Shown: positions 7,051-46,307 of the stretch, piece by piece | Layout: every line of letters begins with the position of its first letter | Numbering within the stretch: the first letter of the stretch is position 1 | DNA from: Octopus sinensis | Lineage: Eukaryota | Direction of reading: 5' to 3' | Assembly: GCF_006345805.1 (NCBI RefSeq) | Contig: NC_043004.1 | Coordinates: 30,070,001 to 30,134,000, forward strand | Length of the DNA stretch: 64,000 bases | The notes under the pieces: model-generated | What the model was told of the DNA's origin: nothing | Database searches by the model: none | What the model saw: only the letters and a program-made list of their open reading frames with translations | Made by a program: the position numbers and the translations under genes

Positions 7051-8030
7051 GTTAAGTCAATTTCGGAGATCTGACGTTTCTGATGAGCGGGAAAAGGGGT
7101 CAGAAATTGCCCTATTAAATAAATGCCATGAACTTCTAAGTTGTTATCGTTTAGCCCCAGGTCAGTGTCGATCAGATCTATGATCAAAAAGCATTCCAGC
7201 CTTGATCATCCATCTTCCCCTTTCCTCCATCCCAAATATGGTTTATCGATTGCGTCAATAAAGTGTTGTTCTTCCAAAGAATCTCACGGACAAGCCGTCT
7301 CCAAGTTCTTTACACGTATCTGGAGCTGTTCAAGGTTGTCTCCCCTTTTGCTTCATCGTCCCATTTATCCATCTCACAGGTCGTAACCTTCCTCTTGAAC
7401 TTCAGTTTTTCCCAAACCAGGACTCAACAGACTTCTTATAGCATTGATTCTTTCATCGAATCATTGATAACTTATCAATCCCTGTTACGTAAATTTCCAA
7501 GAAAAAAAAAAAAAATCAGATGTTCTCGGACCCCATACTACTGATTTCCTTCACAAAATAGGGATAACGGCAACCCATCGGAGGAATGAGCCCTGCGAGG
7601 TGGAGTGGCTGCTCGTTGCAGCGAGTGTCTTTGGCCATTCCCCGCAGCAACGCAGTCACGGTCATTACCGCTGGACGCGGCTTAGCATCCAACTTGTTCT
7701 GGAATATATAGTCCATCTCAACCTCCTTCTCTGTCTTCCGCTGCTTTCCCCCATCTTTTTCTTTTTCCTTTTCTTTCCTTATCTTTCTTTTTTTCCTGAT
7801 TCTTTGTATTTAAATATAATTAAATCTCAGAATGAGATTGAAACAGTAATCGCTCGATAATGTAAAGTATAGGAGCCATCTTATCATGGCTAACCACATT
7901 GGGGAGGGGATGTTACTGTAGCTCTATAGCTCCAAGAGATCTTTGTCTCTAGCTGGCTCTAAACACAATATCTGTGTCTTTAGAGTATTTGCAAAGGGAG
8001 GCCATCCCTTCCTCGCAAGCCTGAGTGATA

Positions 8031-8073
8031 CGCTCGAACTAGTTTCGGGATTTTTGTCCCTCGTCAACGGGCG
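8031..8073 (-). ncRNA. Minimal type I hammerhead ribozyme motif (copy 1)
   Basis: Minus strand reads CGCCCG-TTGACGA-GGGA(CAAAAA)TCCC-GAAA-CTAG-TT-CGAGCG: stem I, core (U3 variant of CUGANGA), stem II, GAAA, palindromic ACTAGT stem III, GUU cleavage triplet. Confidence 0.75.
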
Positions 8074-8637
8074 GTAACCACCAGGTAGCGATGAAAGAGA
8101 AGGCTCCTTTGCAAATAGATATAAGTTTTTCTAATGGCATCTGCCACTGATGTCGAAAAACGAACAGTAAGCATAATTAAATCTCAGAATGAGACCCCCT
8201 CCCCTATGTGGTTAGTCATGATAAGATGGCTTCTATACTTTACATTATCGAACGATTACTGTTTCAATCTCATTCTGAGATTTAATTATGCTTACTGTTC
8301 GTTTTTCGACATCAGTGGCAGATGCCATTAGAAAAACTTATATCTATTTGCAAAGGAGCCTTCTCTTTCATCGCTACCTGGTGTTTTTTGAATTTTTCCT
8401 CGGCGTATACCAATATTTTTCTGTTGCTGCAAATCGTTGTGTGAGTTCGTTTCCGTTTGTCTACTCTGTCGTGTTACAAGTAATATCATTGTTGAACTGT
8501 TTTTGACCCAGTAATTTTCGCCCTTCGGGGTAGAAAATTTCTGTGTGCTGTTTTGTGTGAACTCTTAACCTGTATAGGTTATTTTTGGAAAAAAAAAAAA
8601 TTCTCTTGTCATTTGTGACAAGTTTGTGTTGTCTAAT

Positions 8638-10072
8638 ATGGAATTAGACTTAAGTTCAAAAAAAGACTTTCCCGAGATGGGAGAAAGTATAACAACTGTT
8701 AAACAAAAGGAAACACAGACAAAACCCAGTTTTTCAGACGCCGTAGGTGGCGAAGTCGAAGAAATGGAGGTATCAATGGAAAGATTATTCAAGTTTAGAT
8801 CGCTGGTGCAAAAAAGTGGTGAAGAAACACGATTGGTACCGCCCCCCGAAACTATACAAGCAATAAAGGAAAAAATGGTCACCTACAGGGTGTACAATAT
8901 CAAGGAAAAACGAATGACCGACGTGAAAAACGAAATGGTCGAAAAGTGTATGGCTCCAATATGGAGTAAAGTTAGTCATGTCAACCGAGGTGCAAGAAGC
9001 GCTACAGTGGAGGCGCATTTTGAAACGGCGGAAGTAGCAAGGCAAATTTCGACACAAACGTTGAAAAACGAGAGTATAATACTGCTACCCTTATATTTAG
9101 GATGCAGAACCGCAAAAGTGACCCTAGAAGATATACCAAGGGCTACGACGTGATGTGGGCGGCAACAGCGGTCATTTTTGATGTTGAATCAAAATTGACA
9201 ATTTTAAGTATGAAGAGAAAAATTGCAAAACACTGGAGAGGCCAGCAGCTGGAGATGATAATCCAGGCGGAAAATGCGACGTTGGAAAGCCTACCAGACA
9301 GAGTCTTCGTGGGGGAGGGGCACTCCATACGAGTTTCGGTGGAAGGACGCAGGCCCAGATGTTTTAAGTGCGGGCAAAAGGGCCACGTTCGCTCCGTTTG
9401 CACAAAAAAAAATAATGCGGGCAACGCCCCCCCACAAAACGCTGTGAAGAACGCAGAAAGCAGCAAAGTGGAGAAAAAAGTAACGGCTGGCGAAAACAAG
9501 GAGGAAAAAATAAACAGGTCGAACTCCAAAAAGGAGGAAGACAAGAACGAAATGCAAAATGAGAAAGGAAAGGATGAGGAAAATAATGCAACAAAAACAA
9601 ATAAACAAGAAGACATGGAATTTACGAACGTGTCCAACAAAAGGAAAAAATCCATCACCCCTGACTCCCCACCCGTATCAAAAAAAAAAAACAACGCAGA
9701 CGAACAAATTAAAAATATTCTCCAATCCCACCCCGGCGGTACTACACTTATAGGCCAGCACTTTAACAAACCCCACCCCCCAACTGAAAAGGGTTTAAAC
9801 CCAACGAAAAAATTATTGCATACACCACAAAGAACGTGAGAGTAGAAACATGGGTGAAAGCAAGTACGCTGATCAGGTGCTACAAAGCGACCGAGAAGGA
9901 AGCGGAGTGGCGATATGGAAGGGTCGGCGAAGAAGGATGGAAAGACAAAACCTTACAAAGCCACGTAAAAGCCGGCTTCATTAAGGATGTCACCCAGGAG
10001 GTGACAACTGGGAAATTACCCGTTAGCCCGGCAGTCACACACCAACCCAGAGCCCGGTGGCAACGCCGGTGA
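8638..10072 (+). pseudogene. Tx1-like ORF1 (gag-like) with CCHC zinc knuckle, frameshifted
   Basis: Pieces 8626-9153, 9102-9839 and probably 9836-10072; CFKCGQKGHVRSVC knuckle near 9360-9401, then a Lys/Glu-rich linker. The extension to 10072 is inferred. Confidence 0.8.
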
Positions 10073-10168
10073 AACACCCAGCAGCAACGGCGAGTGGGGG
10101 GAGACAGGCAGAAAGAATCTGTCAGGCTCCCTCTCGCAACCGTGAGTAAATAATTTTCTTTTTTCTCG

Positions 10169-13100
10169 ATGATTAAGTTAGGTTGTATAAATGTGCGTGG
10201 AATGGGATCGAAATGGAAACAGGCTTGTTTTCGTGACGACCTCATTTCACATAGAATCGAAGTAGCTATTGTTACCGAGTCCAAGATGAAGGGACCCCAA
10301 GCGTTCTCACCACTTCTCAATGGTTACGAGAAATTTATTTCTCCTAGCCGAGGGGGAGGTGCAGGCGTGGCAGTTCTTTTCAGGAAGAACTTGGACTTAC
10401 AGGTAAGTACTGTCTTTTTGGACCCAGAAGGTAGGCTGGTTGTCCTAGATGTGACGCACGTGAGTAAGCAGTCCTTCAGGTTGGTGGCTGTCTACGCTCC
10501 TAACGGACGTGGGCAGACCGGTTTTTATCGGGAACTGGAGCACTTTCTAGTGACGTCCAAAACGGTAGTCTTGGTAGGGGATTTCAACACCATTCTCGAT
10601 GCGCGGGTGGGTGGTGTAGGCTCGAGCGATAGGAAGGGGAATCCTGGCCTCAAGGCTCTACTAGCGAGCTTTAATCTAGTAGACCGTTTTCGACTGGATG
10701 AGCCGAACGTTCCACAGTGGACGTGGAGTAATAACGACGGCTCACTCAGATCGTACATAGATAGAGTATTTGTTAAGGAACGAGATAGGAATAGTGTTAG
10801 CTGTCCACAATTCTCTGTTGTGCCTTACACGGATCACAAACTTGTAACGTGTGAGGTACATGTAGATAAATGCCATAGACAAGGTCCCGGGTACTGGAAG
10901 ATGAACAAGTCTATTTTGACCTGTGAAGCTTTCCGTACCCGGATTAAGGAATTAGTACAGAGGGCATTATGTGGCACCATCATTAATAATAGATGGTGGC
11001 TCGCCCTCAAAAGAGCCATCCGTTTGGAGTCCATTAGATTTAGCAAGCAGCTAAGTTTAGATAGGACTAGAATAGAGGGCGAATTAGTTAAGAACTTAGA
11101 CGAGGCTATGAAATCTGGCTGTGCATCCGGAGTGTTGGCAGCGAGAGCGGTATTGTACCGTCACCTCAACGCCAAGCACGAGGGGTGTAGAGTCAGAGCT
11201 AAGTTACGTGCAGGAAAACGAGAAGGTATTAACGTTGCCGGATGGGCCCGTCGTGAGGAGAGTCAGAAGGGCAAAAAGTCCTGTATTATGTCCTTATCTG
11301 ACGAGCAGGACCGCAAGATCTATGGACAGGAGGAGATGCAGAAGGTCCTTCACCAGCATTTCGCACGGCTGTTTGGGAGCGGTGGCCCGCTCGAGCGTGG
11401 GGAGACCTTAAAGGACTTCCTAGCTGGTGGGCCTCGGCTCTCGGCGGGTGAGGCGGAGTGCTGTGAAGGATCGATCTCTCCCGCAGAGGTAAGAGGGGTT
11501 ATGGCCGAGTGCGCCGGGGAAAAGTCACCGGGATTGGATGGTCTACCCTATGAATTTTATTGTTGTATGCCGGACTTGTTCGGGGACATACTGGCAAGCG
11601 TCTATGCAAACTGGCAACAGAATGGGAGGATTCCCAGCTCTGTGAGTCGGGGAGTTGTGACGCTGGTCCAGAAAGACCCGAGCAAGGGGGACAGTATTAG
11701 TAATTACAGGCCCATAACTCTACTTAATGTAGAGTTTAAGATTTTGGCCAAGGTGTTAGCAAAAAGGTTGACGGCTGTCGTGAAGAAACTTGTCGGGAAG
11801 GCACAGACATGTGCAATCCCAGGCAGGTCGATCCAGGATAATCTTCACCTTCTCCGCTACACTATAGATAGGGTCGGGAAATTAGACGGCAAAGGAGGGG
11901 CATTGGTCCATTTAGACCAAAGTAAAGCGTTTGATAGGTGGACCATCGGTACTTGGCGGCGGTTCTCGAAGCGGCTGGGCTGGGCCCTGGCTTCTGCGGG
12001 TGGATCTCAGCTATGTACAGCGGCATCAAGTCCACAGTCCAGATAAACGGTTACCTAACGGAGCCGTTTTCGATCAAGCGTTCAGTTCGTCAAGGGTGCC
12101 CCTTGTCCCCGCTCCTGTATGTTTTGGCTCTTGAGCCATTGCTGCAGAAGCTGGAGAAGTTGGGAGGCAACCCTAATGAAATCGGATGCGGTAAGTCTGT
12201 TTCTGCCTATGCGGATGACGTCACCCTCATCGTGTCCAACGGAACACAGCTACCTCGGGTAGTAGGTGCTCTCCATAGATACGAAGCGGTGGCAGGGGCA
12301 AAAGTTAACAGGGACAAGTCCATCGGTTTGCGCCTCGGCACCTGGAGGAACAAGCAGATACCGTCCAGTGTTGTTGGACACTGGACGGATGGTCCTGTTA
12401 AATTGCTCGGAGTATGGTTTGGTCCAGACTCCCAGACGGAGAAGAATTGGAGCGAGGTAACGAGCAAGGTGGATGCCATAGTACGGAAGTGGTCCGGAAG
12501 CATCTTTCCTTGAAAGGGAGGGCGGAGGTGGCACAGATGTTTATAGCCTCTGTCGTCACCTACCGCCTGACCGTCGTGCCTTGCCCCGATTCGTGGTTAA
12601 ACAAGTTGGAACGACTTCTTTTCCGCTTTTTGTGAAAGGAGGAAAGCCACTTGTGAGACGCTCCGTGTGTTGCCAGGAACTGCTAAAGGGTGGACTGGGG
12701 ATGCCTTGGCTAATGATGCGCAAGCATGCGTTGAGGCTGAGACACCTCTGGTGTTACCTGGAGGATGATAAGGTGTGGAGTTCGCTGGCAGAGGAATTCT
12801 TCCCGCGACCGGCCTCTATGGAGGGATTTACACCCGGTCTCATTAAAGGACGTAAACTGACTTCATGGCAGAAGGAGTGCCGACAGGCACTCTGGCTGAT
12901 CCACAAGATGGGTAAGGCCGGCAGCGGGAATACCACCTCGGTGTTCTATAAAGGGCTGGTAGGAGGAAAAAATGACGACGTCCTAGGAAGGGCTCTGGGG
13001 TTCGATGAGGATCAACTCTCCAACCTGTTTAAGAAGACTTTCAGGCGGCCGGGTATTTGGATAATTACCAAAAATCCCTGACCTAGCAGTGCTATAGGAA

Positions 13101-13558
13101 TGCATTACCTGTTCGCGAGAAGTTATCCAGGCACGGAATGTCAGTGCCACCGACGACGTCCAAGATGTGGGTTGGACGATGAAACCGTTCAACACGCTTT
13201 TGTACAATGTCGGGAGCTGTCAGGCTTGATAAGTTACGTGGAACACGTGTTGTCGCATCTGGGACGAGTACAGCTGTCGGCTGGATCTATGATTAAGATG
13301 ATACCGCCAACTGGACTCTCAAAGGAAGGTAAGGCTTGTTTTTACTGTACGGTGGCAGTATTGAAAGAGTGTGTATGGAGAACTAGAGTGGAAGGTCTAG
13401 TGAAAGGGTCCTTTATCTCTGGCCCCGGTTTGTTAAAATACTTCGGATATCATCTGAAGAGCAAGATGGGGTTGGAGAAGAGGAGCCTGCCACAGAAAGA
13501 GTATATGGAACGTTGGAAGGATGTGATGAGAAAGGTGGGTGAGAGTAACCCAGCTTAA
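10169..13558 (+). pseudogene. Tx1-like ORF2: AP endonuclease, reverse transcriptase, C-terminal Zn finger; several frameshifts and one TAG
   Basis: APE motifs (GCINVRG, VTESK, VGDFN, YIDR, DHK); RT motifs (KSPGLDG, NYRPITLLN, DQSKAFD, GCPLSP, YADD); RPRCGLDDETVQHAFVQC finger. Breaks near 11935, 12500, 12633, 13050 and 13150; TAG at 13084-13086. Confidence 0.93.
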
Positions 13559-13932
13559 TCATCGAGGAAAGGAGGGATCGGCTGCTGGGATTTATAGGCT
13601 GCCGGGTTCAAAATTGAAACTGGTACCTCCCATTACCTTTCACTGTACATAACTGTTTAAAATAAAGAATTAATAATAAAAAAACAGAAATGAAAAGAAA
13701 ACATACGCACTAAAAGTTCTCGTGATAAAGGCAAAAGTAAGCCAAGGTTTCGTTTCAAGGCAAAGTAAGCCAAGTTTTCGTTCAAGTGACATAAAATTTT
13801 AATTTTGTAATTTTTTAAATTTCATTCGAACTCGCATAGCATTTTTGTAACTGTTTTGTCCTGTAATGTATCCATTCTATGTTAGATCTATTGATCATAA
13901 TAAAGAAAATTTCATCGCTACCTGGTGGTTAC

Positions 13933-13975
13933 CGCCCGTTGACGAGGGACAACAATCCCGAAACTAGTTCGAGCG
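13933..13975 (+). ncRNA. Minimal type I hammerhead ribozyme motif (copy 2)
   Basis: CGCCCG-TTGACGA-GGGA(CAACAA)TCCC-GAAA-CTAG-TT-CGAGCG; differs from copy 1 by one base in loop II. Confidence 0.75.
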
Positions 13976-14637
13976 TATCACTCAGGCTTGCGAGGAAGGG
14001 ATGGCCTCCCTTTGCAAATACTCCAAGAACACAGATATTGTGTCTAAAGCCAGCTTGAAACGAAGATCTCTTGGGGCTATAAAGCTACAGTAACACCCCC
14101 TCCCCTATGTGGTTAGCCATGATAGGATGGCTTCTATACTTTACATTGTATTTAAATATTCTAATAAAATAAGGGTATTCAAAAAACAAAAAAACAAAAA
14201 AAAATAATAAAATGTTTCTTGATTTAAAGACTATAGTTCCTTCGTTCTCTTGTCTCATTATCGCTTTTTGATCATAGATAATTAAAGAAATTCAATAAAA
14301 AATATTTAATGAAATCGATAAAGAACAGTAAAAATTGAATCATACTATATTTATATGGTCGGAATAGTTAATGATGCTGTATCGGGGATTCTGACCCCAA
14401 ACGATTGATATTCGGTTAGACATCACGAACGAGTCACCGCAGTTTTACGTGATTGATCTATTAATCGACCAATCAACGTGAAGCTGTGGCGTGATGTGGT
14501 CTTCTTGAACGTTCTAAAATTTAATCTCTTGCCCTTATTAAAAACATCTTTTTGGCGCTTAACTCGGCCCAAACAGACCGCTGATGTCATGGACTACCTT
14601 GGCCGTTTGTCAGATGACTCGTTTCTCAGAGAGACCG

Positions 14638-15103
14638 ATTCTGAACCCCTATCTTGTTCAGAACATTGACCTCCTGGAATCTGTTCAGAGACGTGCAACC
14701 AAACGCATACCCTCCATCAGACACCCACCATATTCTGAGCGCCTTGTTTCCCTGGGCATGGATTCACAGAAGCTCCGGCGTCTGGCGACGGACTTGGTAA
14801 ACGCTCACAAAGTTGTCAACCACCTCACCAATAACAACACTGAACACCTTTTTGATCTCCACGTGTCTAACACACGTGGACATGCCTACAAAGTCGGAAA
14901 ACAACACAGCTCCCATGACTTTCGGAAACATTTTTTCACGCTCAGAGTTGCTGAAGCATGGAATAAACTGCCTGCGTCAGTTGTTGACTGCCATGACACT
15001 GCATCCTTTAAGGCCCTCATGCTTTCCGAAATCCGTCGAAACTACACCTGATTATATATGCACTTTAGATGAGTTGTAGTGCACCTGAGCACTGTACACA
15101 ATG

Positions 15104-21394: not shown

Positions 21395-24300
21395 TTCTCT
21401 AGTCGGAAACAAGGGTACCTCTTAAATGACATAAAATCATACAAGTTAGAAATCATAGCCATAAGTGAGACCAGACTCCACAATCCGCGGGCCCTAAAGA
21501 CCATGTTTGGCGGATAGTTCAACATTTATTTTCCCCCCTGTCTGCCAAGAATGGGCGGTAGTGGCACCGCGGTACTTTTTCGCGAGAGTCTGGATCTCAA
21601 AGTAAAGACAATATTCGTAGACCCGGAGGGTAGACTGGTCGTCCTGGATGTCGATGGCACCAATGGGTGCGCTTTTCGACTCGTATCAGTCTACGCACCG
21701 CCCTTAACAGGTCGGGCGGATTTCTTTCAACGTCTAGAAGTATTCTTGGGAACGTCTCGTCCTTACCTCTTAGTGGGGGATTGGAATGCTACTTTGTACA
21801 CGCATGTAGACTACGTGGGCAGAGATAGGAATAGACGGGGATACAAATGCCTCAGAGACCTGCTCAGACGCTTTCAACTGTCCGACAGGTTCCGAATGCG
21901 CCAACGTGGACATGGAGCAAACCGCATCGGGTCGTCGAGATCGTACCTAGATAGGATACTGTGTAGGACAGTAGATTGAGATAGCATAGGATGTCCACAA
22001 TTTCACATAGTCAGCTACACGGATCACAAACTTGTGACATGTACGCTAGACTTAGGTAAGACACATAGGCAGGGTCCCGGATACTGGAAACTAAACGCGT
22101 CTTTCCCATCGAGACAGGTTTTCAGAGACCGGATTAGCACACTAGCAAAGAGGGCTTTGACGTGAGCCATCGTCAACAACAAATGGTGGTTTGCCCTCAA
22201 GAGAGCAGTAAAAGCAGAAGCGATTAGGTACAGCAAGCACTAGCCATAGAAATAAAGTAAAGGGTGAGCTAGTTAAGAAGCTAGAAGAGGCAATTAGAAG
22301 CGGCATCGCATCCGACGTTTTGGCGGCGCGGTTGGCCCTCGACCAACACTTCAACGCCAAATACGAAGGGTGTGTTGTCAGAGCTACGATGCGTGCTCTA
22401 AGGTGTTAGAGCCGCGAGAGAGGCCCGGGTGGCAGAGGCGCAACAGGGTAACAATGCCACCATTCGGTCTCTGGTAGATGAACAGGGCGTGAATTGCTCG
22501 AGCCAAGTAAAATGTGTGAGGCCTTTCAACAGCATTTTGCCCGACTGTTGGGGACGAGTGGTGGGCAAGAACGTAGGGTGGACTTCAGTGCCTACCTACA
22601 CAGCCTACCATGACTCTCGACAAGAGAGGCAGGGCGCTGCGAAGGTGCCACCACAGCGGCGGAAGTGCAGGACGCGATGGCAGAATGCTCGAGGGATAAA
22701 CAGACTTGTTTGGAGACGTCTTGGCAGCGGTGTACTGCAACTGGCAGCAAAACGGGAGCATTCCTGGTTTTGTGAGCCGAGGAGCCGTAACACCGCTGAA
22801 GAAAGATCTAAACAAGGGGAATGTAATAGATAACTTTAGGCCCGTCACTCTGCTTAATGCAGACTTGAAAATTTTGGCCAAGTTGTTAGCCAAGAGATTG
22901 GCGCTTGTCATCGAGAAACTGGTCGACAAGGCGCAAACGTGCGCCGTGTCGGGCCGGAGCATCCATGATAACCTCCACCTGATGCGCTACATCATAGACA
23001 GGGTAGTTAAGGAACCTGGCATGGGTGGGGCGCTGATCAATTTGGATCAATCGAAAGCTTTCGATAGAGTAGACCATCGATACTTGGAGGCTGTCCTCAG
23101 AGCGGCTGGTTTCGGTCCCGTCTTCCGCGGCTGGATAGCCGCTTTGTACACAGGCATCCGTTCGGTAATTCGCGTAAATGGACATCTATCGAGACCTTTC
23201 GACATCGCACGTTCGGTCCGTCAGGGATGCCCCCTCTCGTCGCTTCTCTACGTATTGACTCTCGGGCCATTGTTGCGGAAGCTGGCAACTCTGAGGGGCA
23301 TCCCGCGAGAACTGGGATGCGGGACGAGCGTGTCTGCATACGCAGACGACGTCACCGTCATAGTGTCTAGCCACGAGCACACCGAGCAGGTCGGCGAGAC
23401 ACTGAAAAACTACGAAGCGGTGACAGGAGCGAAAATCAACCTGGATAAATCAGCGGGCTTGCGACTCGGCACCTGGAGAAGCAAGCCCATGCCGTCCACC
23501 ACCGCCTCCGTCGTGGGACGCTGGACCGACGGTCCGGTCGAGTTGCTCGGGGTCTGGTTTGGTCCGGACCTCCAAATGGAGAAGAACTGGAACGAGATAA
23601 CGAGTAGGGTGGTCACTCTCGCCCGGCAATGAGCCGAGAGGAAACTGTCCCTAAAAGGTCGGGCGGAGGTGGCGAACTCGTACATCGCGTCCGTCATCTA
23701 CTACCATCTGACCGTTGTGCCTTGTTCCGACCCTACCATCACCAAACTAGAACGCATTCTCTTTCGCTTCTTGTGGAAAGGATGCGTCCCGATGGTCAGG
23801 CGATCCATTTGCTGTCAACACCCGTTAAAAGGAGGACTGGGCATGCCGTGGTTGATGATGCGCAGACACGCGCTGAGACTGCGACATCTCAGGCTCTACG
23901 TAGACGACGGTGAACAGGTGTGGTCACAATTTGTGAGGCACGCTTTCCCGCAACTTGTCTCCATGACAGAACTGCAGTCGTGGATCAAAAAGAGGCCGAG
24001 GAAGGGCGAATGGCACCGCGAGTGTCGCGTTGCTCTCAAGCAACTCTGCCGTCCCGGGTCGACTTTAAGTGACTCCAACACACCCCAAGCATTCTGTAGG
24101 AGATTAGTGGAGGGGAGGTACGACGACGAGCTCAGGGCGAACCTGGACGTCGACAAGGAATACCTAACACGCCTGTTCAGGACGACTTTCGGGCCAGGGC
24201 CCATGGACAACTTCCAGAGTTCCCTGGCCTGGCAGTGCTACCGAGAAGCACTACCCGTTTGGGATAAGCTCTACAGACATGGCTCGAGAAACACGGGGCC

Positions 24301-25065
24301 GACCTGCCCGAGATGCGGTCAGAGCGACGAAACCGTTCTGCACGCACTCGTGCAGTGTCCAACAATTTCCGACCTGTGGGCTTATGTCGAACAACTGCTG
24401 TCACGTGTGGGACGAGTCGGTTTATCAGCCGAGTCTATCGTCAATATTGTCACACCTCCTTCCTTCAAACGGGAAGGAAGAGCTGTTTTCATCATCCTTG
24501 TGGCTATGGCGAAAGAATGTATCTGGTGGACGCGTCTGAAAGGATTGGAAACAAACACTTTCCTCTCTGGTCAATCTCTCATCAACTTCTTCAAGTATCA
24601 CTTGAAAAGGAAAGTGAGAGTAGAGAGGCAAGTTTTGTCTAGCGAATGTTTTAAAAAATGATGGGTGAATGTAGCAAGGACGGCACGTATGAATGACGAA
24701 GCCACCTTGAGCATAATCCTATGAACCTGGAAATTTAAAACAGAGGGTTACCCACCACTTGCAAACAAATGTGGTAACATGTAACAATATTGACCGAGGT
24801 TACCGTGGTCTTTTCCGTATGCTTTTCTTCCCACGGATAAACCTTATCTGCTTCCCCCTTTACACCTTACATCAAGACACTGTGATACACGATCCCTATT
24901 GATCGTTTTTTTTCCCCTTTTCCCCCTTTTTTCCTTTTCTTCTTCTTTCCCTTTTACGATCCCTTTTGATCGAAAACCTACCCCACTTTTTTTTTCCCAA
25001 AAAAGAAAAGCTCTACTTTGTAATCTGTCCCGTCTGTGTGCAGTCCTCAGTGGCTTATAAAGAAA
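21395..25065 (+). mobile_element. Second, 5'-truncated and decayed Tx1-like LINE (distinct family)
   Basis: APE (ISETR, VGDWN, YLDR), RT 22706-23632 (FRPVTLLN, QGCPLS, YADD), TCPRCGQSDETVLHALVQC finger; several in-frame stops; pyrimidine-rich 3' UTR ending TTATAAAGAAA; no clear TSD. Confidence 0.9.
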
Positions 25066-25343
25066 CGTATCTCTTCTGATTTGGATCTTTCTCCTTAAAA
25101 ACAATTCGATTCTGGGTCTTGACTAATCACCCTTCAACTATAAATTCTAAATAATGATATTTTTCTTTAAAAAATACTTTCTTTCATGGAAATTCCTTTG
25201 CTCGCTGGTTTTCTGTAGCGGTTAGTTTTAGGCATGATTGACTTAGATCAATAAGCATGCCCATCCAATGAGTATGAGGCATTATTATCTTCTCATGAAA
25301 CTCCAAGATTTAGTCATCATTTGTTAGTATGGTAGTGCTTAAA

Positions 25344-30303: not shown

Positions 30304-31148
30304 GAAAAATAAGTCAAGGTAGAAAATGCTAAAATAGTTTTATAAGAAAACATTTCAGTACCGGTTCCAGTCATTAAAACTTTTTCAGTGGTAGAGTATG
30401 GAAAACAAGTGAATTTTGGAAAAATTAAAAGAAAAGTTTTTTGAAAGAATATTTGCATAGTGTTCAAATACATGGAGCATTTCCTTGTTTCTGTCCGTCT
30501 CTGTCTCTCTTGTTTACTCTTGTGGGTTCGTGGTCGTTATGAATTCTTGGCAGGGAAAAAGAAGAAGAAGAAGAAGGGGGAGGAGGAGGAGGAGGAGAAG
30601 AAGAAGAATGCGTGAGTGCCATGATAGTAGTAGGATATTAAATGGTCAAGTGCCCTGAAAGTGACTTGTGGATGGTAGTAGTCATTGAATTCTTGAGACA
30701 TCTCTTTTGAATGTATTGTTTATAAAATTTGCGTAGGTGTTATTCTATTCAGCAATAGTAGTAAAGTTAGGAAGGAGGTGACGAAGAGGAAGAAGACGAA
30801 GAAGGAGAAAGAGAAGGGAGAATAATAAAGGTGATATGATAGTAGTAGGAATCCTACAATTATCATACCACCTGCATTCCTTTATTATTCTCCCTTCTCT
30901 TTCTCCTTCGTCTTCTTCCTCTCCGTCACCTCCTTCCTAACTTTACTACTATTCCTGAATAGAATAACACCTACGCAAATTTTATAAACAATACATTCAA
31001 AAGAGCTGACTCAAGAATTCAATCACTACTTCCATCCACAAGTCACTTTCAGGGCACTTGACCATTTAACATCCTACTACTATCATGGCACTCACGCATT
31101 CTTCTCCTCCTCCTCCTCCTCCTCCTCCTCCCTCTTCTTCTTCTTCTT

Positions 31149-31179
<31 letters not shown>

Positions 31180-31426
31180 TCTGCCACGAATTCCCCATGA
31201 CCTCGAAGCCACAAGAGTAAACAAGAAAGACAGAGACATGCAGAAACAAGGAAAATGCCCCTTGTATTTGAATTCTATGCAAATATTCATTTAAAATCTT
31301 TTCTTTTAATTTTTCCAAAATTTAATTGTTTTCCATACTTACAGTTGAAAAAGTCTCAATGACTGAAACCGATACTGAAATGTTTTTTATAAAATTATTT
31401 TAGCATTTTCTACCTTGACCTTTTTC
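30304..31426. repeat. ~1.1-kb palindrome with 3-nt loop
   Basis: Arms 30304-30849 and 30853-31426 are reverse complements; centre GTAGG-AAT-CCTAC. Confidence 0.92.
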
Positions 31427-36918: not shown

Positions 36919-37079
36919 TAATAATAATAATAATAATAATGATGATGATGATGATGTTGATGACGATGATGATGATGATGATAATAATAATAATGATCCA
37001 TTTTACTATAGGCACAATTTATAACAATATAACTATTGATAGGGGAAATAACACTAATACTAATAATAGCTCTAGTAAC

Positions 37080-37604
37080 GAAAATGAAAATGGATTGTCC
37101 CTAAATAATACTAATACCATGAATTATTTTCCCAGCTGTAATTGTAGAATTAGATCAAAATGTCCGGTATCTGGCCGCTGTCTGGTTCAATATGTAATTT
37201 ATAAATGTACAATAATGACTTTAAATAATAACTATCTTTATTTCGGTTGTTCGGTGGATCTAAAAAAGCGTTTAAACAACCATCTTCCCTCCTTTAGGCT
37301 TAAACATAAGGCAGGTTGCACAACACTGTCCAGTAAAATTTGGGAACTGAAAAGAAAAAATATAGAATTTAACCTGAAATGGGATATAGTAAGAAAGGCA
37401 CAGCCTTATAAAAATAGTAGAGATGGTTGTGAACTTTGTTCAATGGAAACATATGAAATTTTAAAACATAGGAATAATACAAATTTGTTAAATAACCGTT
37501 CTGAAGTAGGAGTATCTTGCATACATCGCACAACCCGTACGTTTATTATTTTAAATAATAATATTCTGACCATTCCTAAATTTTCAAATCCTAATTCTTT
37601 ATAA
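37080..37604 (+). mobile_element. Penelope-like (Neptune-type) GIY-YIG endonuclease domain, RT absent
   Basis: CNCRIRSKCPVSGRCL...VIYKC...YFGCSVDLKKRLNNH...LSSKIWELK...CELCSMETYEI...LLNNRSE. Confidence 0.85.
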
Positions 37605-41232: not shown

Positions 41233-44200
41233 TTTGAATGTACGTATATATAATAAACGGATGAGGAATTTCACTCGAGTGTATGCTACAGATTATATGA
41301 ATTATGTGCGTATAAGAAAGCTTCCAGTAATGTACGAATGTATGTTTTACATGAATACAAAGACAAATATCAGAAGACAATATTCTTTCGTTAATAAACA
41401 TAACGATTTATTCCTTGATGGTAAATCTCACATGTGGTAGTAGAAAGCACATCACAAGGTAATTATGTGTTCAAGTCAACAGGGTGTAGTGTGACACATA
41501 AGTTCATTTCTCCATAACATCCGAGGTGGTTTGATTCGGTACTTGAGAGTTGCAAAATGTAACTGGTTCAAAATATCTATGAGTTGTATAGCTTAGTTGT
41601 GAAGCGAGATAGTAATCTCATAGCAATATAAATGACATTTACTAATTGGCGTTGAATCGACAACGTGTCTTGTCATCTGGACGTTAAATCAGCAACTGAT
41701 GTTTACATCTCAACGCTCTATCGGCAACTGACATTTTGCCTTTCAAAACTAGCGCGCTTCGCCGCTAGGTAGAAGCTGCCACACGTAATCTTCCGCAGCC
41801 AGCAGTAATTGGATGTATTTGGGGCGTAGCATGACTGTGCTATGCCGCTACAACAAAATAGTGCTAATTTGTCTCACTACAAATACCCTCTAGCAGACTG
41901 AAAGTCGATGCAAAATAACAAATGTAAAGCAAAATATACCTCTAAGGACCAATAAAATAAAAACAACGTTGAAAATTGCAAAAGTATGTGTGTTTGAACG
42001 ATGAAGAATTTTCACAAATCATATACAGGGTGTTCACAAAAATATGTACATAGAAAAAGATTCTGAAAAATTTAAAGGTAACAAGAGACATGCAAAACTA
42101 GGCGAATGCAAAGGAAAGTTAACAAACACGCAAATTCATGAAAAAGAAAACAGCATAAATGTATGAAGCAGGAAAAGAAATACAATACAATAACAGCCAC
42201 TATGGGCCAGTTCATATATAAAAAGTTTTACACAGTTTCTTGGGCCAATGGACACGACGACCACTGCTGGTTGTCGTGACGTATGTTGGTGGAGGAGAGG
42301 TGTGTACGATTTTGTTTGTAATGTGTGCGATGGTGCAACATTTATTTCTGGTTGTGCAGTCTATGAGGGGGTGTATGAAGCTCTGGTGAGAGAGCGTCTG
42401 TATAAGCCCGTTTAAGTCTATCAACCCAGACTGTTTCTCGAGAATCGTTTATATCAATGGTGAAATGTTTATTTGAATGAGAAAGGACACGATAAGATAC
42501 TGAGTAAGGTGGCGTGAGGGGACTTCTCACTGCATCATTTCTAACAAAGACATGTGTCCATAAAGCAATATTCCTCGGGACCGAAGATGTGGTGGCTTGT
42601 TGCCGAGTGTTCATAGGTGGTAATTCGGAAATAGGAATGCAGGCTGTTCACATAAATGCCGGATCTTGAGTGGTGAGATCGACTGGGGCAAGCATCTTCC
42701 CTCGAAAAGTCAAAGAAACACCGTCCAATAGTTCAGCAGGGGAGTATCCCAGATCCTCCTTGAATGCAGTCCGAATACCGAGTTGTACTATGGGAAGGTA
42801 ATCACTCCAGCGCTGAGTGTCGGGGTAAGTACGGAATGCAGCTTTCAGCTGGCGATGGATACGCTCTACCATTCCGTTAGATGCCAGATGATAGCTGGTA
42901 GTCCGAATACGTTGAGCACCGATGGTTTTTGTCAGCTCAGAAAAAAGGTGAGATTCGAACTGTCTGCCACTGTCGACAGTAGCGGTGTAGTAGCATGATA
43001 TCCATCTTGATACCAGAACTCGCGCTACGGATTCAGCAGTAATGTCACTTAATGGAATCGTTTCAGGCCATTGGGGGAAGCGGTCAATACAAGTCATTTA
43101 TATGTAAATCCCTGACTGACAGGCCAGGATCCCGCAAAATCGATATGTATGTGGTGAAAACGTTCATCTGGAGAACTAAAAGTTCCAAGAGGGGTACGGA
43201 TGTGCTTATGCACCTTCGACTTTTGGCACTGGAGGCAAGATCGAGTCCATGCAGTAATGTCCCGTCTCGTATTCGGCCAGAAGAATATAGCCGTTATGAG
43301 TTTTACTGAGGCCGAAACCCCAGGGTGTGAAAGAGTGTGTAAAGCTTCAAATACAACTCGACGATGGGTTCCTGGAATGAAAGGACGAGGCGAATCCATC
43401 GAGGCGTCACACAATATCTGTTTGTCGGAAGTTGATAGTGAGGACTTGAATTTGCATGTTGCAAATTCAGGAGAAGATGTGTCCAGTGCGTCCAGAGGAG
43501 GTTGATCCGAGGACAAAACAGTCAGGTCGATCTCTGGAGTGGATGCCAATAAATTGATCGGCAGTAGTGCATTGAGCATCAGAGATATGTTGAACGTCGC
43601 TGGTGAACTGCGATATAAAGTCCACTTGTTGAGTCTCTCTTGGTGAGTACTTTTCCGGCTTGGACAGCAGGGCAAAAGTAAATGGTAAAGTTTCTCCCTT
43701 CGAGGATATGTTGAAAATGCTTCACCGACAGGAATATTGCTCACAATTCGCGACCAAAAGTGTTACATCGCGTCTCGGCAGGTTTCAATTTTCGAGAGAA
43801 AAATGCAAGAGGTTGTAGCTGTCCTAAATAAAACTACTGTAAAACGGCACGACGAAATGTTGTGTCCGATGTATCAACCACAAGCGAAAGCTTTGTATCT
43901 GAGACAGGATGCGCTAGAAGAGACGCTTTAGCAAGCTTATGTTTTGCAGAAATGAAAGCTTCAAATGGACCGAAATCAGTGCATTATCTTCATTCTTCAT
44001 ACGACGATTTCTCAACATTTTCAGGCAGAAGTTCAGCACAGTGAAGAATAAAACGTCTATAAAAATTTATCAAACCAAGGAAAAGGCGCAGCTGACGAAG
44101 GGAAGAAGGAAGATGAAGGTCTTCAATAGCCTTCACTTTTTCAGGAAGAGGTCGAATTCCCTCGTTGTCAATATGATCCAGAAACACAAGGGCCAAAACA

Positions 44201-45017: not shown

Positions 45018-46307
45018 CGAGGGGCGTTCAACAAGTAATGCCTCTGGCCCACTTGCAGATTTTTGATCTAGCTGAAATTTTGCATGTGCAATTATTGATA
45101 GCTCTATAGATTAAGTGGCAAATTACAGCTCTGAACTAATTGTGGTTTCTGATTTACAGGTGTTTGAACTGAGTCAAGTGTGAAATGGAGCCTGTTGAGT
45201 GTCGAACAGTGATCCGGTTTTTGTATTTGAAAGGACGCATACCACGGGAGACTTTTGCTGAAATGAAAGTAACTTATGGTGATGACACCCCACCATATGA
45301 CCTTGTAAAATGCTGGCATCGTGAATTCAAACATAGTCGGAACTCTGTGGAAACAGCTCCCAGATCTGGTCACCCCACTTCTGCCATTGATGAGGCATCT
45401 GTCCGTCAAGTTGAGGCCGCCATTTTGGAAGATCGACGCATAACTATTCGCCAAATAGCCCATGATGTCAAGATTAGTACCGGGTCTGTAGAAACTATCA
45501 TTCATGACTATTTGCATATGCAAAAGGTGCCTGCTAGATGGATTCCCAGGTTGCTCACACCTTTCCAGAAGCAAGAACGCGTCGAGTGCTCGAGGATGAA
45601 TTTGGAGATGTGCCAAGAAGATGAGTCAAAATTTTTCAAAAGACTGATTACACAGGATGAAACCTGGGTCCATCACTATGATCCAGAGACCAAAGCCCAG
45701 TCAATGCAGTGGAAGCACCGTGACTCACCTCTTCCAAAGAAGGCAAGGGTGCAGCCCTCCGCTGGCAAGATCATGCTCAGTTTTCTGGGACCAGGACGGA
45801 GTAATGATGACAGATTTCCTGGCAAAGGGTACCACAATTACAGGAGCCTATTATGCTTCACTTTTGAGGAAATTAAGAGAAGCTATCAAAATCAAGAGGC
45901 GGGGCAAGATCAGCAAAGGCATCCTCCTCGTGCAGGACAACGCTCCGGTCCACAACTCGCGTGTCGCCAGATCAGAAGCACAGGCGTGCGGCTATGAACT
46001 CCTCCCCCATCCCCCTACTCTCCTGACCTTGCACCCTCTGATTTTCACCTCTTCCCAGCCGTGAAGTTGTTTTTGAAAGGAAAGCGTTTCCCAGATGATG
46101 CAGCCTTGATTTCCTCAGTCACGTCGTGGTTGGAGGGCCAAGCTGGGGTCTTCTACAAAAACGGTCTCCAGAGCTGCATCAAACGATGAGAGAAAGGCGT
46201 AACTCCGGGTGGTTCCTATGTAGAAAAAGACTAATAACTGCGCCAAGTTTCGTTGCTCTACTGCTATGGGAAGTGGGTCAGGGGCATTACTTATTGAACG
46301 CCCCTCG
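45018..46307 (+). mobile_element. Complete 1290-bp mariner (DD34D) transposon
   Basis: TIR CGAGGGGCGTTCAA(C/T)AAGTAATGCC matches 24/25 (34/37 extended); TA TSD at 45016-45017 and 46308-46309. Confidence 0.97.
45185..46234 (+). pseudogene. Mariner transposase pseudogene
   Basis: WIPRLL, ITQDETWVHHY, LVQDNAPVH and YSPDLAPSDF motifs; frameshifts near 45780 and 46010; premature TGA near 46187. Confidence 0.92.

What the first reader, a model, noticed from the sequence alone, without database searches (positions are those of the whole stretch)
8366..13927. Full-length Tx1-like LINE inserted into the ribozyme repeat, with the empty site preserved next door: possible retrozyme-targeting retrotransposon
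Seen: a perfect 18-bp TSD (TTTCATCGCTACCTGGTG) flanks a complete Tx1-like element. The uninterrupted site is present in the inverted arm (8078-8095, minus strand), which fixes the pre-insertion state. The site lies in the 5' arm of the rod, about 5 nt from hammerhead stem I. Known: many Tx1-group elements are sequence-specific for multicopy targets (U2 snRNA, tRNA-array spacers, 5S rRNA, microsatellites, and another transposon for Xenopus Tx1L). Inference: this family may specifically target a hammerhead retrozyme, a parasite-of-a-parasite system I do not know to be described. One copy cannot establish specificity.
Basis: partly seen in the sequence, partly recalled or inferred. Interest (0 to 1): 0.85.

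Follow-up and report, generated by a model that had tools for sequence, protein, structure and literature searches.

The report
LINE nested in a hammerhead-ribozyme repeat
A 5.5-kb LINE retrotransposon inserted into one copy of a small hammerhead-ribozyme-like repeat, and the uninterrupted sister copy next door proves the insertion, but one copy cannot show that this LINE family seeks out such repeats, so for now it is an ordinary nested insertion.

Summary
A perfect 18-bp duplication (8366-8383 and 13910-13927) brackets a 5,526-bp LINE at 8384-13909. The uninterrupted site lies on the minus strand at 8079-8096, one base off the stated coordinates. The LINE has ORF1 with a CCHC knuckle and an ORF2 with APE and RT domains colinear with human L1 ORF2p. 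It is full-length but not coding-intact: ORF1 has one frameshift, and ORF2 has three frameshifts and one stop. The host sequence is an inverted pair of a 357-bp unit, about 1.1 units per arm, flanked by its own 12-bp duplication, a layout typical of Penelope-like elements. Each arm carries one type-I hammerhead-like motif. Both score below Rfam's threshold (33 and 31 bits against 52) and have U at core position 3, which I recall as conserved C.

Target specificity could not be tested. No other copy of the family exists in the window, the protein database (best identity 54-69%) or the metagenome and genome scans. The four relatives examined do not sit in hammerhead repeats. Tx1 families that target other transposons and satellites are already known. 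My verdict is an ordinary nested insertion (about 0.7), with a family that prefers this target still possible (about 0.15-0.2).

The parts
7806..7817 (+). Left copy of the 12-bp direct repeat GTATTTAAATAT that flanks the whole inverted hammerhead pair. It is the probable target-site duplication of the composite.
   Evidence: Only two matches in the window, both at the outer edges of the pair; 0.04 expected.
7811..8194 (-). Uninterrupted arm: 1.07 copies of the 357-bp hammerhead-bearing unit (u1-357 plus u1-27).
   Evidence: Direct-repeat spacing of 357. Self-BLAST. The permuted monomer folds as a circle at -109.3 kcal/mol, z = -5.3 against dinucleotide shuffles.
8015..8085 (-). Type-I hammerhead-like motif with core UUGACGA...GAAA. 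Helix III is the palindrome ACUAGU. The predicted cleavage site is 8037|8036.
   Evidence: Rfam HH9 at 33.2 bits, below the gathering score of 52; E 3.7e-6 locally and 1.7e-4 for the whole window.
8079..8096 (-). Empty (pre-insertion) target site.
   Evidence: Exact 18-mer with contiguous flanks.
8196..8383 (+). Plus arm, part left of the LINE (u286-357 plus u1-116).
   Evidence: 100% identical over 116 nt to the reverse complement of the minus arm.
8366..8383 (+). 5' copy of the 18-bp target-site duplication.
8384..13909 (+). L1-group (L1/Tx1-type) LINE of 5,526 bp. It spans the 5' UTR to the 3' end ...ATAATAAAGAAAA, with AATAAA at 13899-13904.
8626..9839 (+). ORF1, split over two overlapping frames (8626-9153 and 9102-9839). 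The CCHC zinc knuckle lies at about 9357-9407.
10169..13558 (+). ORF2, with APE at about 10238-10837 and RT at about 11690-12414, followed by a C-terminal Cys/His region. It is broken by frameshifts near 11936, 12500-12519 and 12620-12638, and by a stop at 13079-13081.
   Evidence: The APE catalytic residues align with those of human L1 EN.
13728..13786 (+). 28-bp tandem repeat (2.1 copies) in the 3' UTR.
13910..13927 (+). 3' copy of the 18-bp target-site duplication.
13921..13991 (+). Hammerhead-like motif just downstream of the LINE. It stays complete because the duplication supplies its first 7 nt. The predicted cleavage site is 13969|13970, 60 nt after the LINE's 3' end.
   Evidence: Rfam HH9 at 31.2 bits, below the gathering score of 52; E 7.1e-4.
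13928..14147 (+). Plus arm, part right of the LINE (u117-336).
14148..14159 (+). Right copy of the 12-bp direct repeat GTATTTAAATAT.

Best explanation
This is a two-step nested insertion.

1. A non-coding unit of 357 bp carrying a hammerhead-like motif integrated at GTATTTAAATAT. The unit resembles a retrozyme or a Penelope-like pseudo-LTR. It integrated as an inverted pair of partial tandems, each arm a little longer than one unit, and made a 12-bp duplication.
2. Later, an L1-group (L1/Tx1-type) LINE integrated into the plus arm after unit position 116 by target-primed reverse transcription. Its APE endonuclease nicked the bottom strand at 5'-CGATGAAA^GAGAAGG-3'. Reverse transcription started at the RNA 3' end (...AAUAAAGAAAA). 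The top strand was cut 18 nt downstream, at CCTGGTG^GTTACC, which produced the 18-bp duplication.

The copy has since acquired, or inherited, at least four frameshifts and one stop, so it is not autonomous as assembled. Nothing here shows that the site was chosen. In a genome that is about two-thirds repeats, a LINE landing inside another repeat is the default outcome.

Shown: both duplications, the empty site, and the LINE's domains and defects. Inferred: the positions and order of the nicks, and the Penelope-type origin of the pair.
For: - The 18-bp duplication and the intact sister site.
- The LINE's domains and its colinearity with L1 ORF2p, and its broken frames.
- The 12-bp outer duplication, arms of 384 and 408 nt against a 357-nt period, and one hammerhead-like motif per arm.
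- Penelope-like elements typically form partial tandems with an adjacent inverted 5'-truncated copy and carry hammerhead motifs in their pseudo-LTRs (PMC8557442).
- Animal retrozymes are 150-450-bp type-I hammerhead repeats with duplications longer than 4 bp (PMC7229834). A 2026 preprint (10.64898/2026.07.22.740005) argues that they derive from Penelope-like elements.
- O. vulgaris is about 66% repeats, with 13 recently active L1-Tx1 families and 421 recent insertions (PMC13282606).
- The relatives examined sit at other kinds of site. Family B at 21398-25068 ends CTTATAAAGAAA|CGTATC, and no hammerhead unit occurs anywhere else in the window. The Argonauta copies end in (TCTA)n. A metagenome relative ends in (ATT)n.
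- The LINE contains no hammerhead-unit sequence.
Against: - Many Tx1-clade families are target-specific, and known targets include other transposons and satellites. The prior for specificity is therefore not small.
- The inferred first nick (AAA^GAG on the nicked strand) is not the T-rich L1 consensus, as far as I recall that consensus. The primer cannot pair with the RNA's A-rich end, so the endonuclease may have its own preference.
- The LINE has the same orientation as the hammerhead motif.
- With one copy, non-specificity is as untested as specificity.
Confidence: 0.7

Rival explanations
1. The LINE family is target-specific, or strongly target-preferring, for this hammerhead unit. Its endonuclease recognises the sequence around CCTTCTC^TTTCATCG...GGTG^GTTACC and uses the multicopy repeat as a safe haven, as Tx1L does with Tx1D and Tx1-Mar does with Mariner-N4_AMi.
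For: - It is an L1-group element in a lineage the octopus literature labels L1-Tx1.
- Tx1 families are known to target transposons, LTR elements and satellites.
- The nick site is atypical and offers no A/T priming homology.
- The junctions are precise, the insertion is full-length, and it runs in the same orientation as the hammerhead motif.
Against: - Only one copy exists, and the identical site in the sister arm is unoccupied.
- Relatives at 46-70% amino-acid identity are not in hammerhead units.
- The LINE's UTRs carry no target-derived sequence.
- The Tx1-clade membership itself is untested.
Confidence: 0.17
2. The LINE is site-specific and also exploits the ribozyme. Transcripts that read through from a copy in this site would carry a complete hammerhead 12 nt after the LINE's end and would self-cleave 60 nt downstream. 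That would leave a defined 3' end whose UUUCAUCG... tail is complementary to the nicked target and could prime precise re-insertion. This would be analogous to R2 and its HDV-like ribozyme, but at the 3' side and using a borrowed ribozyme.
For: - The duplication keeps the downstream motif whole, at 13921-13991.
- AATAAA lies only 5 nt from the element's end, so transcripts probably extend into the flank.
- The bottom-strand primer ...CGATGAAA-3' is complementary to the read-through sequence UUUCAUCG.
Against: - The motif is below the Rfam threshold and has U at position 3, which I recall as conserved C (C3) pairing with G8. Activity is therefore doubtful.
- This locus has only one hammerhead motif per strand.
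- There are no expression data, and specificity is unproven.
Confidence: 0.03
3. The structure is an assembly artefact or the product of recombination between repeats, not a true insertion.
For: Inverted and tandem Penelope-type structures are known to confuse assemblies (PMC8557442). The several frameshifts could be consensus errors.
Against: An exact 18-bp duplication flanks a LINE that runs from its 5' UTR to its 3' end, and the matching empty site has contiguous flanks. This is the textbook signature of target-primed reverse transcription and is not expected from a misjoin.
Confidence: 0.03

Closest known systems
Tx1L inserted in Tx1D (Xenopus laevis), and Tx1-Mar families inserted in Mariner-N4_AMi (crocodilians)
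   Same: An L1-group APE-type LINE sits inside another, non-autonomous mobile element and is flanked by a target-site duplication. This is the parasite-in-a-parasite layout (Kojima 2015, PMC4494074).
   Different: In those systems specificity rests on many independent copies. For Tx1L, Kojima 2015 cites Christensen et al. 2000 on the endonuclease's target specificity; I could not read that paper. Here there is one copy and no assay. The host element is an RNA-propagated hammerhead repeat, not a DNA transposon.
Metazoan non-LTR retrozymes and hammerhead-bearing pseudo-LTRs of Penelope-like elements
   Same: - The unit is 357 bp and non-coding, with 43% GC.
- It carries a type-I hammerhead-like motif whose short helix III is palindromic.
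- The predicted circular fold is stable.
- Each arm is longer than one unit.
- The partner copy is inverted.
- The flanking duplication is 12 bp.
   Different: - There is no tandem array here.
- Each strand has only one hammerhead motif, so this locus cannot release monomers.
- The motif is below the Rfam threshold and has U instead of C at core position 3.
- There is no evidence of expression.
Human LINE-1 ORF2p (PDB 8sxt, 8uw3, 9k6g)
   Same: The match is colinear across APE, linker and RT over about 590 residues, E 1.6e-31, and the endonuclease catalytic residues are conserved.
   Different: - The relationship is distant.
- ORF1 has a CCHC knuckle and gives no Transposase_22 hit.
- The C-terminal regions of relatives match zf-RVT.
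- The 3' end is AATAAAGAAAA, not a long poly(A).
- The nick site is not TTTT/AA.
Microsatellite-associated Tx1 families (Kibi, Koshi)
   Same: Cephalopod relatives of this LINE end in ...AATAAAGAAA followed directly by (TCTA)n or (ATT)n. This recalls the Tx1 families that are specific for microsatellites.
   Different: The window's LINE has no microsatellite at either junction. For the relatives it is unresolved whether the repeats are targets or element tails.

Membership tests
L1-group APE-type LINE | ORF2 with an N-terminal APE endonuclease followed by an RT, colinear with L1 ORF2p | tested here: met
   Pfam Exo_endo_phos at 4e-12, and RVT_1 at 1.9e-9 and 6.4e-15. PDB L1 ORF2p at 1.6e-31, residues 6-590 against 12-607. 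The catalytic N, E, D, N, D and H residues align.
L1-group APE-type LINE | Insertion flanked by a target-site duplication of about 7-20 bp | tested here: met
   A perfect 18-bp duplication plus the empty site.
Tx1 clade (within the L1 group) | The RT domain groups with Tx1 reference sequences in a phylogeny (RTclass1 or Repbase) | not testable with these tools
   No Tx1 reference sequences are held, and none of the database hits carries an informative name. The only indirect support is that octopus repeat tables class L1-group LINEs as L1-Tx1.
Target-specific Tx1 family | The same sequence type is found in the flanks of a large share of independent copies (more than 20% in Kojima 2015), with junctions at a fixed position | not testable with these tools
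   Only one copy exists in the window. The protein database holds nothing above 69% identity. The exact-protein look-up found no record. Two metagenome scans and two prokaryote-genome scans returned nothing.
Hammerhead ribozyme (Rfam clan CL00010, HH9/type I) | Score at or above the family's gathering threshold | tested here: not met
   33.2 and 31.2 bits against 52.
Hammerhead ribozyme (Rfam clan CL00010, HH9/type I) | Conserved core CUGANGA...GAAA with helices I, II and III and an H17 cleavage site | tested here: inconclusive
   All core positions are present except position 3, which is U instead of C in both arms. Helix II has 4 bp, helix I has 5 of 6 bp, and helix III is the short palindrome ACUAGU. 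That C3 is conserved is from my own knowledge.
Metazoan non-LTR retrozyme | Type-I hammerhead motifs in short tandem repeats of 150-450 bp, GC below 50%, duplications longer than 4 bp when present | tested here: inconclusive
   The period is 357 bp, GC is 43%, and the duplication is 12 bp. However, each arm holds only 1.07-1.14 units, there is no array, and the hammerhead motif is sub-threshold. The criteria come from PMC7229834.
Metazoan non-LTR retrozyme | Expressed as self-cleaved linear and circular RNA | not testable with these tools
   No expression data are available. The predicted circular fold is stable, z = -5.3.
Penelope-like-element style insertion | Partial tandem with an adjacent inverted 5'-truncated copy, forming inverted repeats around the unit | tested here: met
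   The arms are head-to-head, 7811-8194 (-) against 8196-8383 plus 13928-14147 (+), and are bounded by a 12-bp duplication. The description is from PMC8557442. No Penelope RT or GIY-YIG domain is linked to this unit.

The most novel reading that the evidence does not exclude
This LINE family is a site-specific L1/Tx1-type element whose dedicated target is a fixed position (u116) just upstream of the hammerhead motif in a Penelope-type retrozyme. It would also profit from that position. Read-through transcripts would be trimmed by the borrowed downstream ribozyme, leaving a 3' tail complementary to the nicked target that guides precise re-insertion. I put plain site-specificity, without any use of the ribozyme, at about 0.15-0.2. 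The probability given below is for the full reading.
Probability: 0.04. Interest if true: 0.75.

Novelty: new member of a known kind. Interest (0 to 1): 0.3.

Why it matters
As it stands, this is a clean example of a nested retrotransposon insertion with the empty site preserved 270 bp away. It is useful for defining this LINE family's exact termini and its 18-bp staggered cut. It also documents a hammerhead-bearing, Penelope-style repeat in what is probably a cephalopod.

If the family proved to prefer this site, a ribozyme-bearing retrozyme would join the list of Tx1 targets. That list already holds snRNA, 5S and tRNA genes, microsatellites, satellites, and DNA and LTR transposons. This would be a modest extension. 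It would become notable only if the ribozyme took part in the LINE's own RNA processing.

The test is cheap: one BLAST of the LINE's ends against the source assembly.

Tried and rejected
**Looking for other copies of the family**
- BLASTN of the LINE and of the 357-bp unit against the window found only the locus itself, plus a 67-70% identical second LINE family.
- Two protein-database searches, with APE plus the N-terminal part of the RT and with the RT alone, gave a best identity of 54-69% and no same-family protein.
- An exact-protein look-up of the 625-aa ORF found no record.
- Exact-pattern scans with the LINE's 3' end and with the hammerhead core returned nothing: two scans of metagenome contigs and two of prokaryote genome contigs. 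No eukaryotic genome collection can be searched by DNA here.

**Checking relatives for hammerhead flanks**
- The Argonauta hians locus L001 and the contigs L002 and L003 showed no BLAST hit to the unit and no hammerhead at E <= 1.
- Contigs L004 and L005 were compared only with the two LINE families, and the 3' end of L004 was read directly.
- Loci L006 and L007 were read only at the 3' ends of their LINE copies, which could not be placed precisely, so I dropped them.

**Assigning the Tx1 clade by database names**
- The cluster look-up and a third protein search seeded with a turtle homologue returned only 'unnamed' or 'hypothetical' products.
- The paper on the Tx1L endonuclease (PMC85248) is not held.

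**Ideas considered and rejected**
- The LINE mobilises the hammerhead unit. The two share no 3'-end similarity.
- The hammerhead unit belongs to the Penelope-like fragment at about 36.9-37.6 kb. They share no sequence, and there is no hammerhead motif there.
- Family B has a recognisable duplication that could be compared. None was found.

Full report
**1. The observation**

The 18-mer TTTCATCGCTACCTGGTG occurs three times in the 64-kb window and nowhere else, even with two mismatches allowed. The sites are 8366-8383 (+), 13910-13927 (+) and 8079-8096 (-). Shuffles gave zero expected matches.

The bases outside the two plus-strand copies differ (CCTTCTC|...|TTTTTTGAA against AAGAAAA|...|GTTACCG). 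The duplication is therefore exactly 18 bp, with no microhomology at either junction. The minus-strand copy reads straight through as CCTTCTC-TTTCATCGCTACCTGGTG-GTTACCGCCC.

**2. The insert**

The insert 8384-13909 (5,526 bp, 47% GC) has these parts:
- A 5' UTR of about 250 bp.
- ORF1 with a CCHC zinc knuckle.
- ORF2 with an APE endonuclease and a reverse transcriptase.
- A 3' UTR of about 350 bp that holds a 28-bp tandem repeat and ends ...ATAATAAAGAAAA.

The best solved relative is human L1 ORF2p, colinear over residues 6-590, E 1.6e-31. The endonuclease catalytic residues are conserved. It is therefore an L1-group LINE.

It is full-length but not intact:
- ORF1 is split between two frames.
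- Alignment to intact homologues places ORF2 frameshifts near 11936, 12500-12519 and 12620-12638. The first is a 1-nt loss in DQSKAFDR|VDH.
- There is an in-frame stop at 13079-13081.

Whether these are real mutations or consensus errors cannot be told from the sequence.

I could not test the Tx1-clade label. No reference Tx1 sequences are held, and every database relative is unnamed. A repeat table for Octopus vulgaris lists its L1-group LINEs as L1-Tx1. The nearest named proteins are from cephalopods: Argonauta hians and Acanthosepion pharaonis, both at 48% identity. The label is therefore plausible.

**3. The host sequence**

The ribozyme repeat in this window is not an array. It is an inverted pair of a 357-bp unit:
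- The minus arm is 7811-8194, equal to u1-357 plus u1-27.
- The plus arm is 8196-8383 plus 13928-14147, equal to u286-357 plus u1-336.

Each arm is slightly longer than one unit and starts and ends at different unit positions. This points to a tandem or circular template. The pair is bounded by a 12-bp direct repeat, GTATTTAAATAT (7806-7817 and 14148-14159). These are the only two matches in the window, with 0.04 expected. The pair therefore went in as one event.

This layout, a partial tandem with an adjacent inverted 5'-truncated copy, is described for Penelope-like elements, whose pseudo-LTRs carry hammerhead motifs (PMC8557442). Animal retrozymes are 150-450-bp type-I hammerhead repeats with duplications longer than 4 bp (PMC7229834). 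A 2026 preprint argues that they are non-autonomous derivatives of Penelope-like elements.

**4. The hammerhead motif**

Rfam finds nothing at gathering thresholds. With permissive settings it finds exactly two hammerhead hits in the window, one per arm:
- 8015-8085 (-): 33.2 bits.
- 13921-13991 (+): 31.2 bits. The gathering score is 52.

The alignment shows helices I and II, the GAAA box and a very short palindromic helix III (ACUAGU). From my own knowledge, that helix type is seen in dimer-acting animal and Penelope hammerheads. The 5' core reads UUGACGA in both arms, with U where I recall the conserved C3 that pairs with G8. Activity is therefore doubtful.

The permuted 357-nt monomer folds as a circle at -109 kcal/mol, z = -5.3. 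The unit has 43% GC. I therefore call it a retrozyme-like unit of Penelope type. Several defining features are inconclusive or untestable. This locus has only one hammerhead motif per strand, so it cannot release monomers.

**5. Geometry of the insertion**

The LINE sits after u116, in the same orientation as the hammerhead motif. The last 7 nt of the duplication (CCTGGTG) are the first 7 nt of the HH9 alignment. Because of the duplication, the motif downstream of the LINE is still complete. Its predicted cleavage site is 60 nt beyond the LINE's end.

The inferred nicks are 5'-CGATGAAA^GAGAAGG-3' on the bottom strand and CCTGGTG^GTTACC on the top strand. The first is not an L1-type T-rich site (from my own knowledge of that consensus). 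The primer cannot pair with the A-rich end of the RNA. This is compatible with an endonuclease that has its own preference, but it does not prove one.

**6. Testing specificity**

This was the point of the finding, and it could not be settled.
- The window holds no second copy of the family.
- The best protein-database relatives are 54-69% identical.
- The 625-aa ORF is not on record anywhere.
- Exact scans of metagenome and prokaryote-genome contigs, with the LINE's 3' end and with the hammerhead core, returned nothing.
- No eukaryotic genome collection can be searched by DNA with these tools.

The indirect evidence is neutral to negative. The four relatives examined share the 3' terminus (A/T)ATAAAGAAA but none is in a hammerhead unit:
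- A second L1-type LINE in the window, family B at 21398-25068, is 46-70% identical at the protein level. It ends ...CTTATAAAGAAA|CGTATCTC, with no hammerhead unit.
- Two Argonauta copies end ...GGCTAATAAAGAAA followed by (TCTA)n. Their locus has no hammerhead at E <= 1.
- A metagenome relative ends ...GGCCAATAAAAGAAATC followed by (ATT)n.

The LINE's UTRs contain no sequence derived from the unit. The identical site in the sister arm is unoccupied, which by itself says little.

**7. Weighing the readings**

Octopus genomes are about 66% repeats and hold hundreds of recent L1-Tx1 insertions. A LINE inside another repeat is therefore the expected outcome of untargeted insertion. Against that, many Tx1 families are target-specific. 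Their targets include a piggyBac element, a Mariner family, LTR retrotransposons and satellites (PMC4494074).

My estimates are:
- About 0.7 for an ordinary nested insertion.
- About 0.15-0.2 for a family that prefers this target.
- A few per cent for the more exotic idea that the LINE uses the downstream hammerhead to trim read-through transcripts.
- A few per cent for an assembly artefact.

**8. Novelty**

Nested LINE insertions, hammerhead-bearing Penelope-type repeats, and Tx1 elements that parasitise other mobile elements are all known. Neither literature search found a report linking a Tx1 element to a hammerhead or retrozyme target. Such a target would be new, but as a new member of a known kind. 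Interest is modest until the simple flank survey in the source genome is done.

Noticed in passing
window 7806-7817 and 14148-14159: A 12-bp direct repeat, GTATTTAAATAT, bounds the whole inverted hammerhead pair. These are the only two matches in 64 kb. The pair therefore integrated as one composite, in the manner of Penelope-like elements.
   Followed up: yes
window 7811-8194 against 8268-8383 plus 13928-14147: Divergence between the two arms is strongly uneven: 1 mismatch in u1-212 and 14 in u213-336 (binomial P about 9e-6). Twelve of the 15 are transitions. The near-identical stretch spans the LINE insertion site. Possible causes are a heterogeneous multimeric template, gene conversion near the centre of the pair before the LINE arrived, or RNA-level editing. 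None was tested.
   Followed up: partly
window 8015-8085 (-) and 13921-13991 (+): Both hammerhead-like motifs have U at core position 3 (UUGACGA instead of CUGANGA), so the change was already in their common source. Helix III is the palindrome ACUAGU, the kind I recall from dimer-acting animal hammerheads.
   Followed up: partly
window 21398-25068 (+): A second, 5'-truncated L1-type LINE (family B) is 67-70% identical to the first at the nucleotide level. It has RVT_1 and zf-RVT domains and ends ...CAGTGGCTTATAAAGAAA. No duplication was found, and no hammerhead unit lies nearby.
   Followed up: partly
L001 12729-12965 and 18799-19074 (Argonauta hians), L004 1990-2105 (JGI metagenome contig): Cephalopod relatives share the 3' terminus ...GGC(T/C)AATAAA(A)GAAA followed directly by a microsatellite, (TCTA)n or (ATT)n. 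In L001 two LINE copies that are only 67-70% identical to each other are each followed by the same stretch of about 160 bp at 98.9% identity. This could be a shared target, an unusually long duplication, or a tandem LINE arrangement.
   Followed up: partly
window 36939-37604 (+): This ORF has a weak GIY-YIG match (E 5.5e-4, below the cut-off) and YIGQT-type motifs. It is probably a degraded Penelope-like endonuclease region. It shares no sequence with the hammerhead unit and has no hammerhead motif nearby.
   Followed up: partly
window 14584-15051 (+): A 155-aa ORF lies about 430 bp to the right of the hammerhead pair, and its sequence (...FFTLRVAEAWNKLPASVV...) resembles the C-terminal region of a different LINE clade. 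This rests on my reading only, because it has no Pfam hit.
   Followed up: no
window 43094-43744 (-) and 45185-45997 (+): Other transposon remnants are present: an integrase zinc-binding domain (Integrase_H2C2, of LTR-retrotransposon type) and a Mos1/mariner-type transposase fragment (HTH_48, Transposase_1).
   Followed up: no
window 30439-31296: A large inverted repeat has arms of about 270 nt that are 92% complementary, with a 56-nt spacer. It is built largely of GAA/GGA purine-rich repeats. It gives spurious sub-threshold plant-miRNA hits in Rfam (MIR821, 122 bits against a gathering score of 249).
   Followed up: partly
window 13899-13909: The LINE's AATAAA signal lies only 5 nt from its 3' end. 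Polyadenylated transcripts would therefore be expected to run into the flanking target sequence (inference).
   Followed up: no
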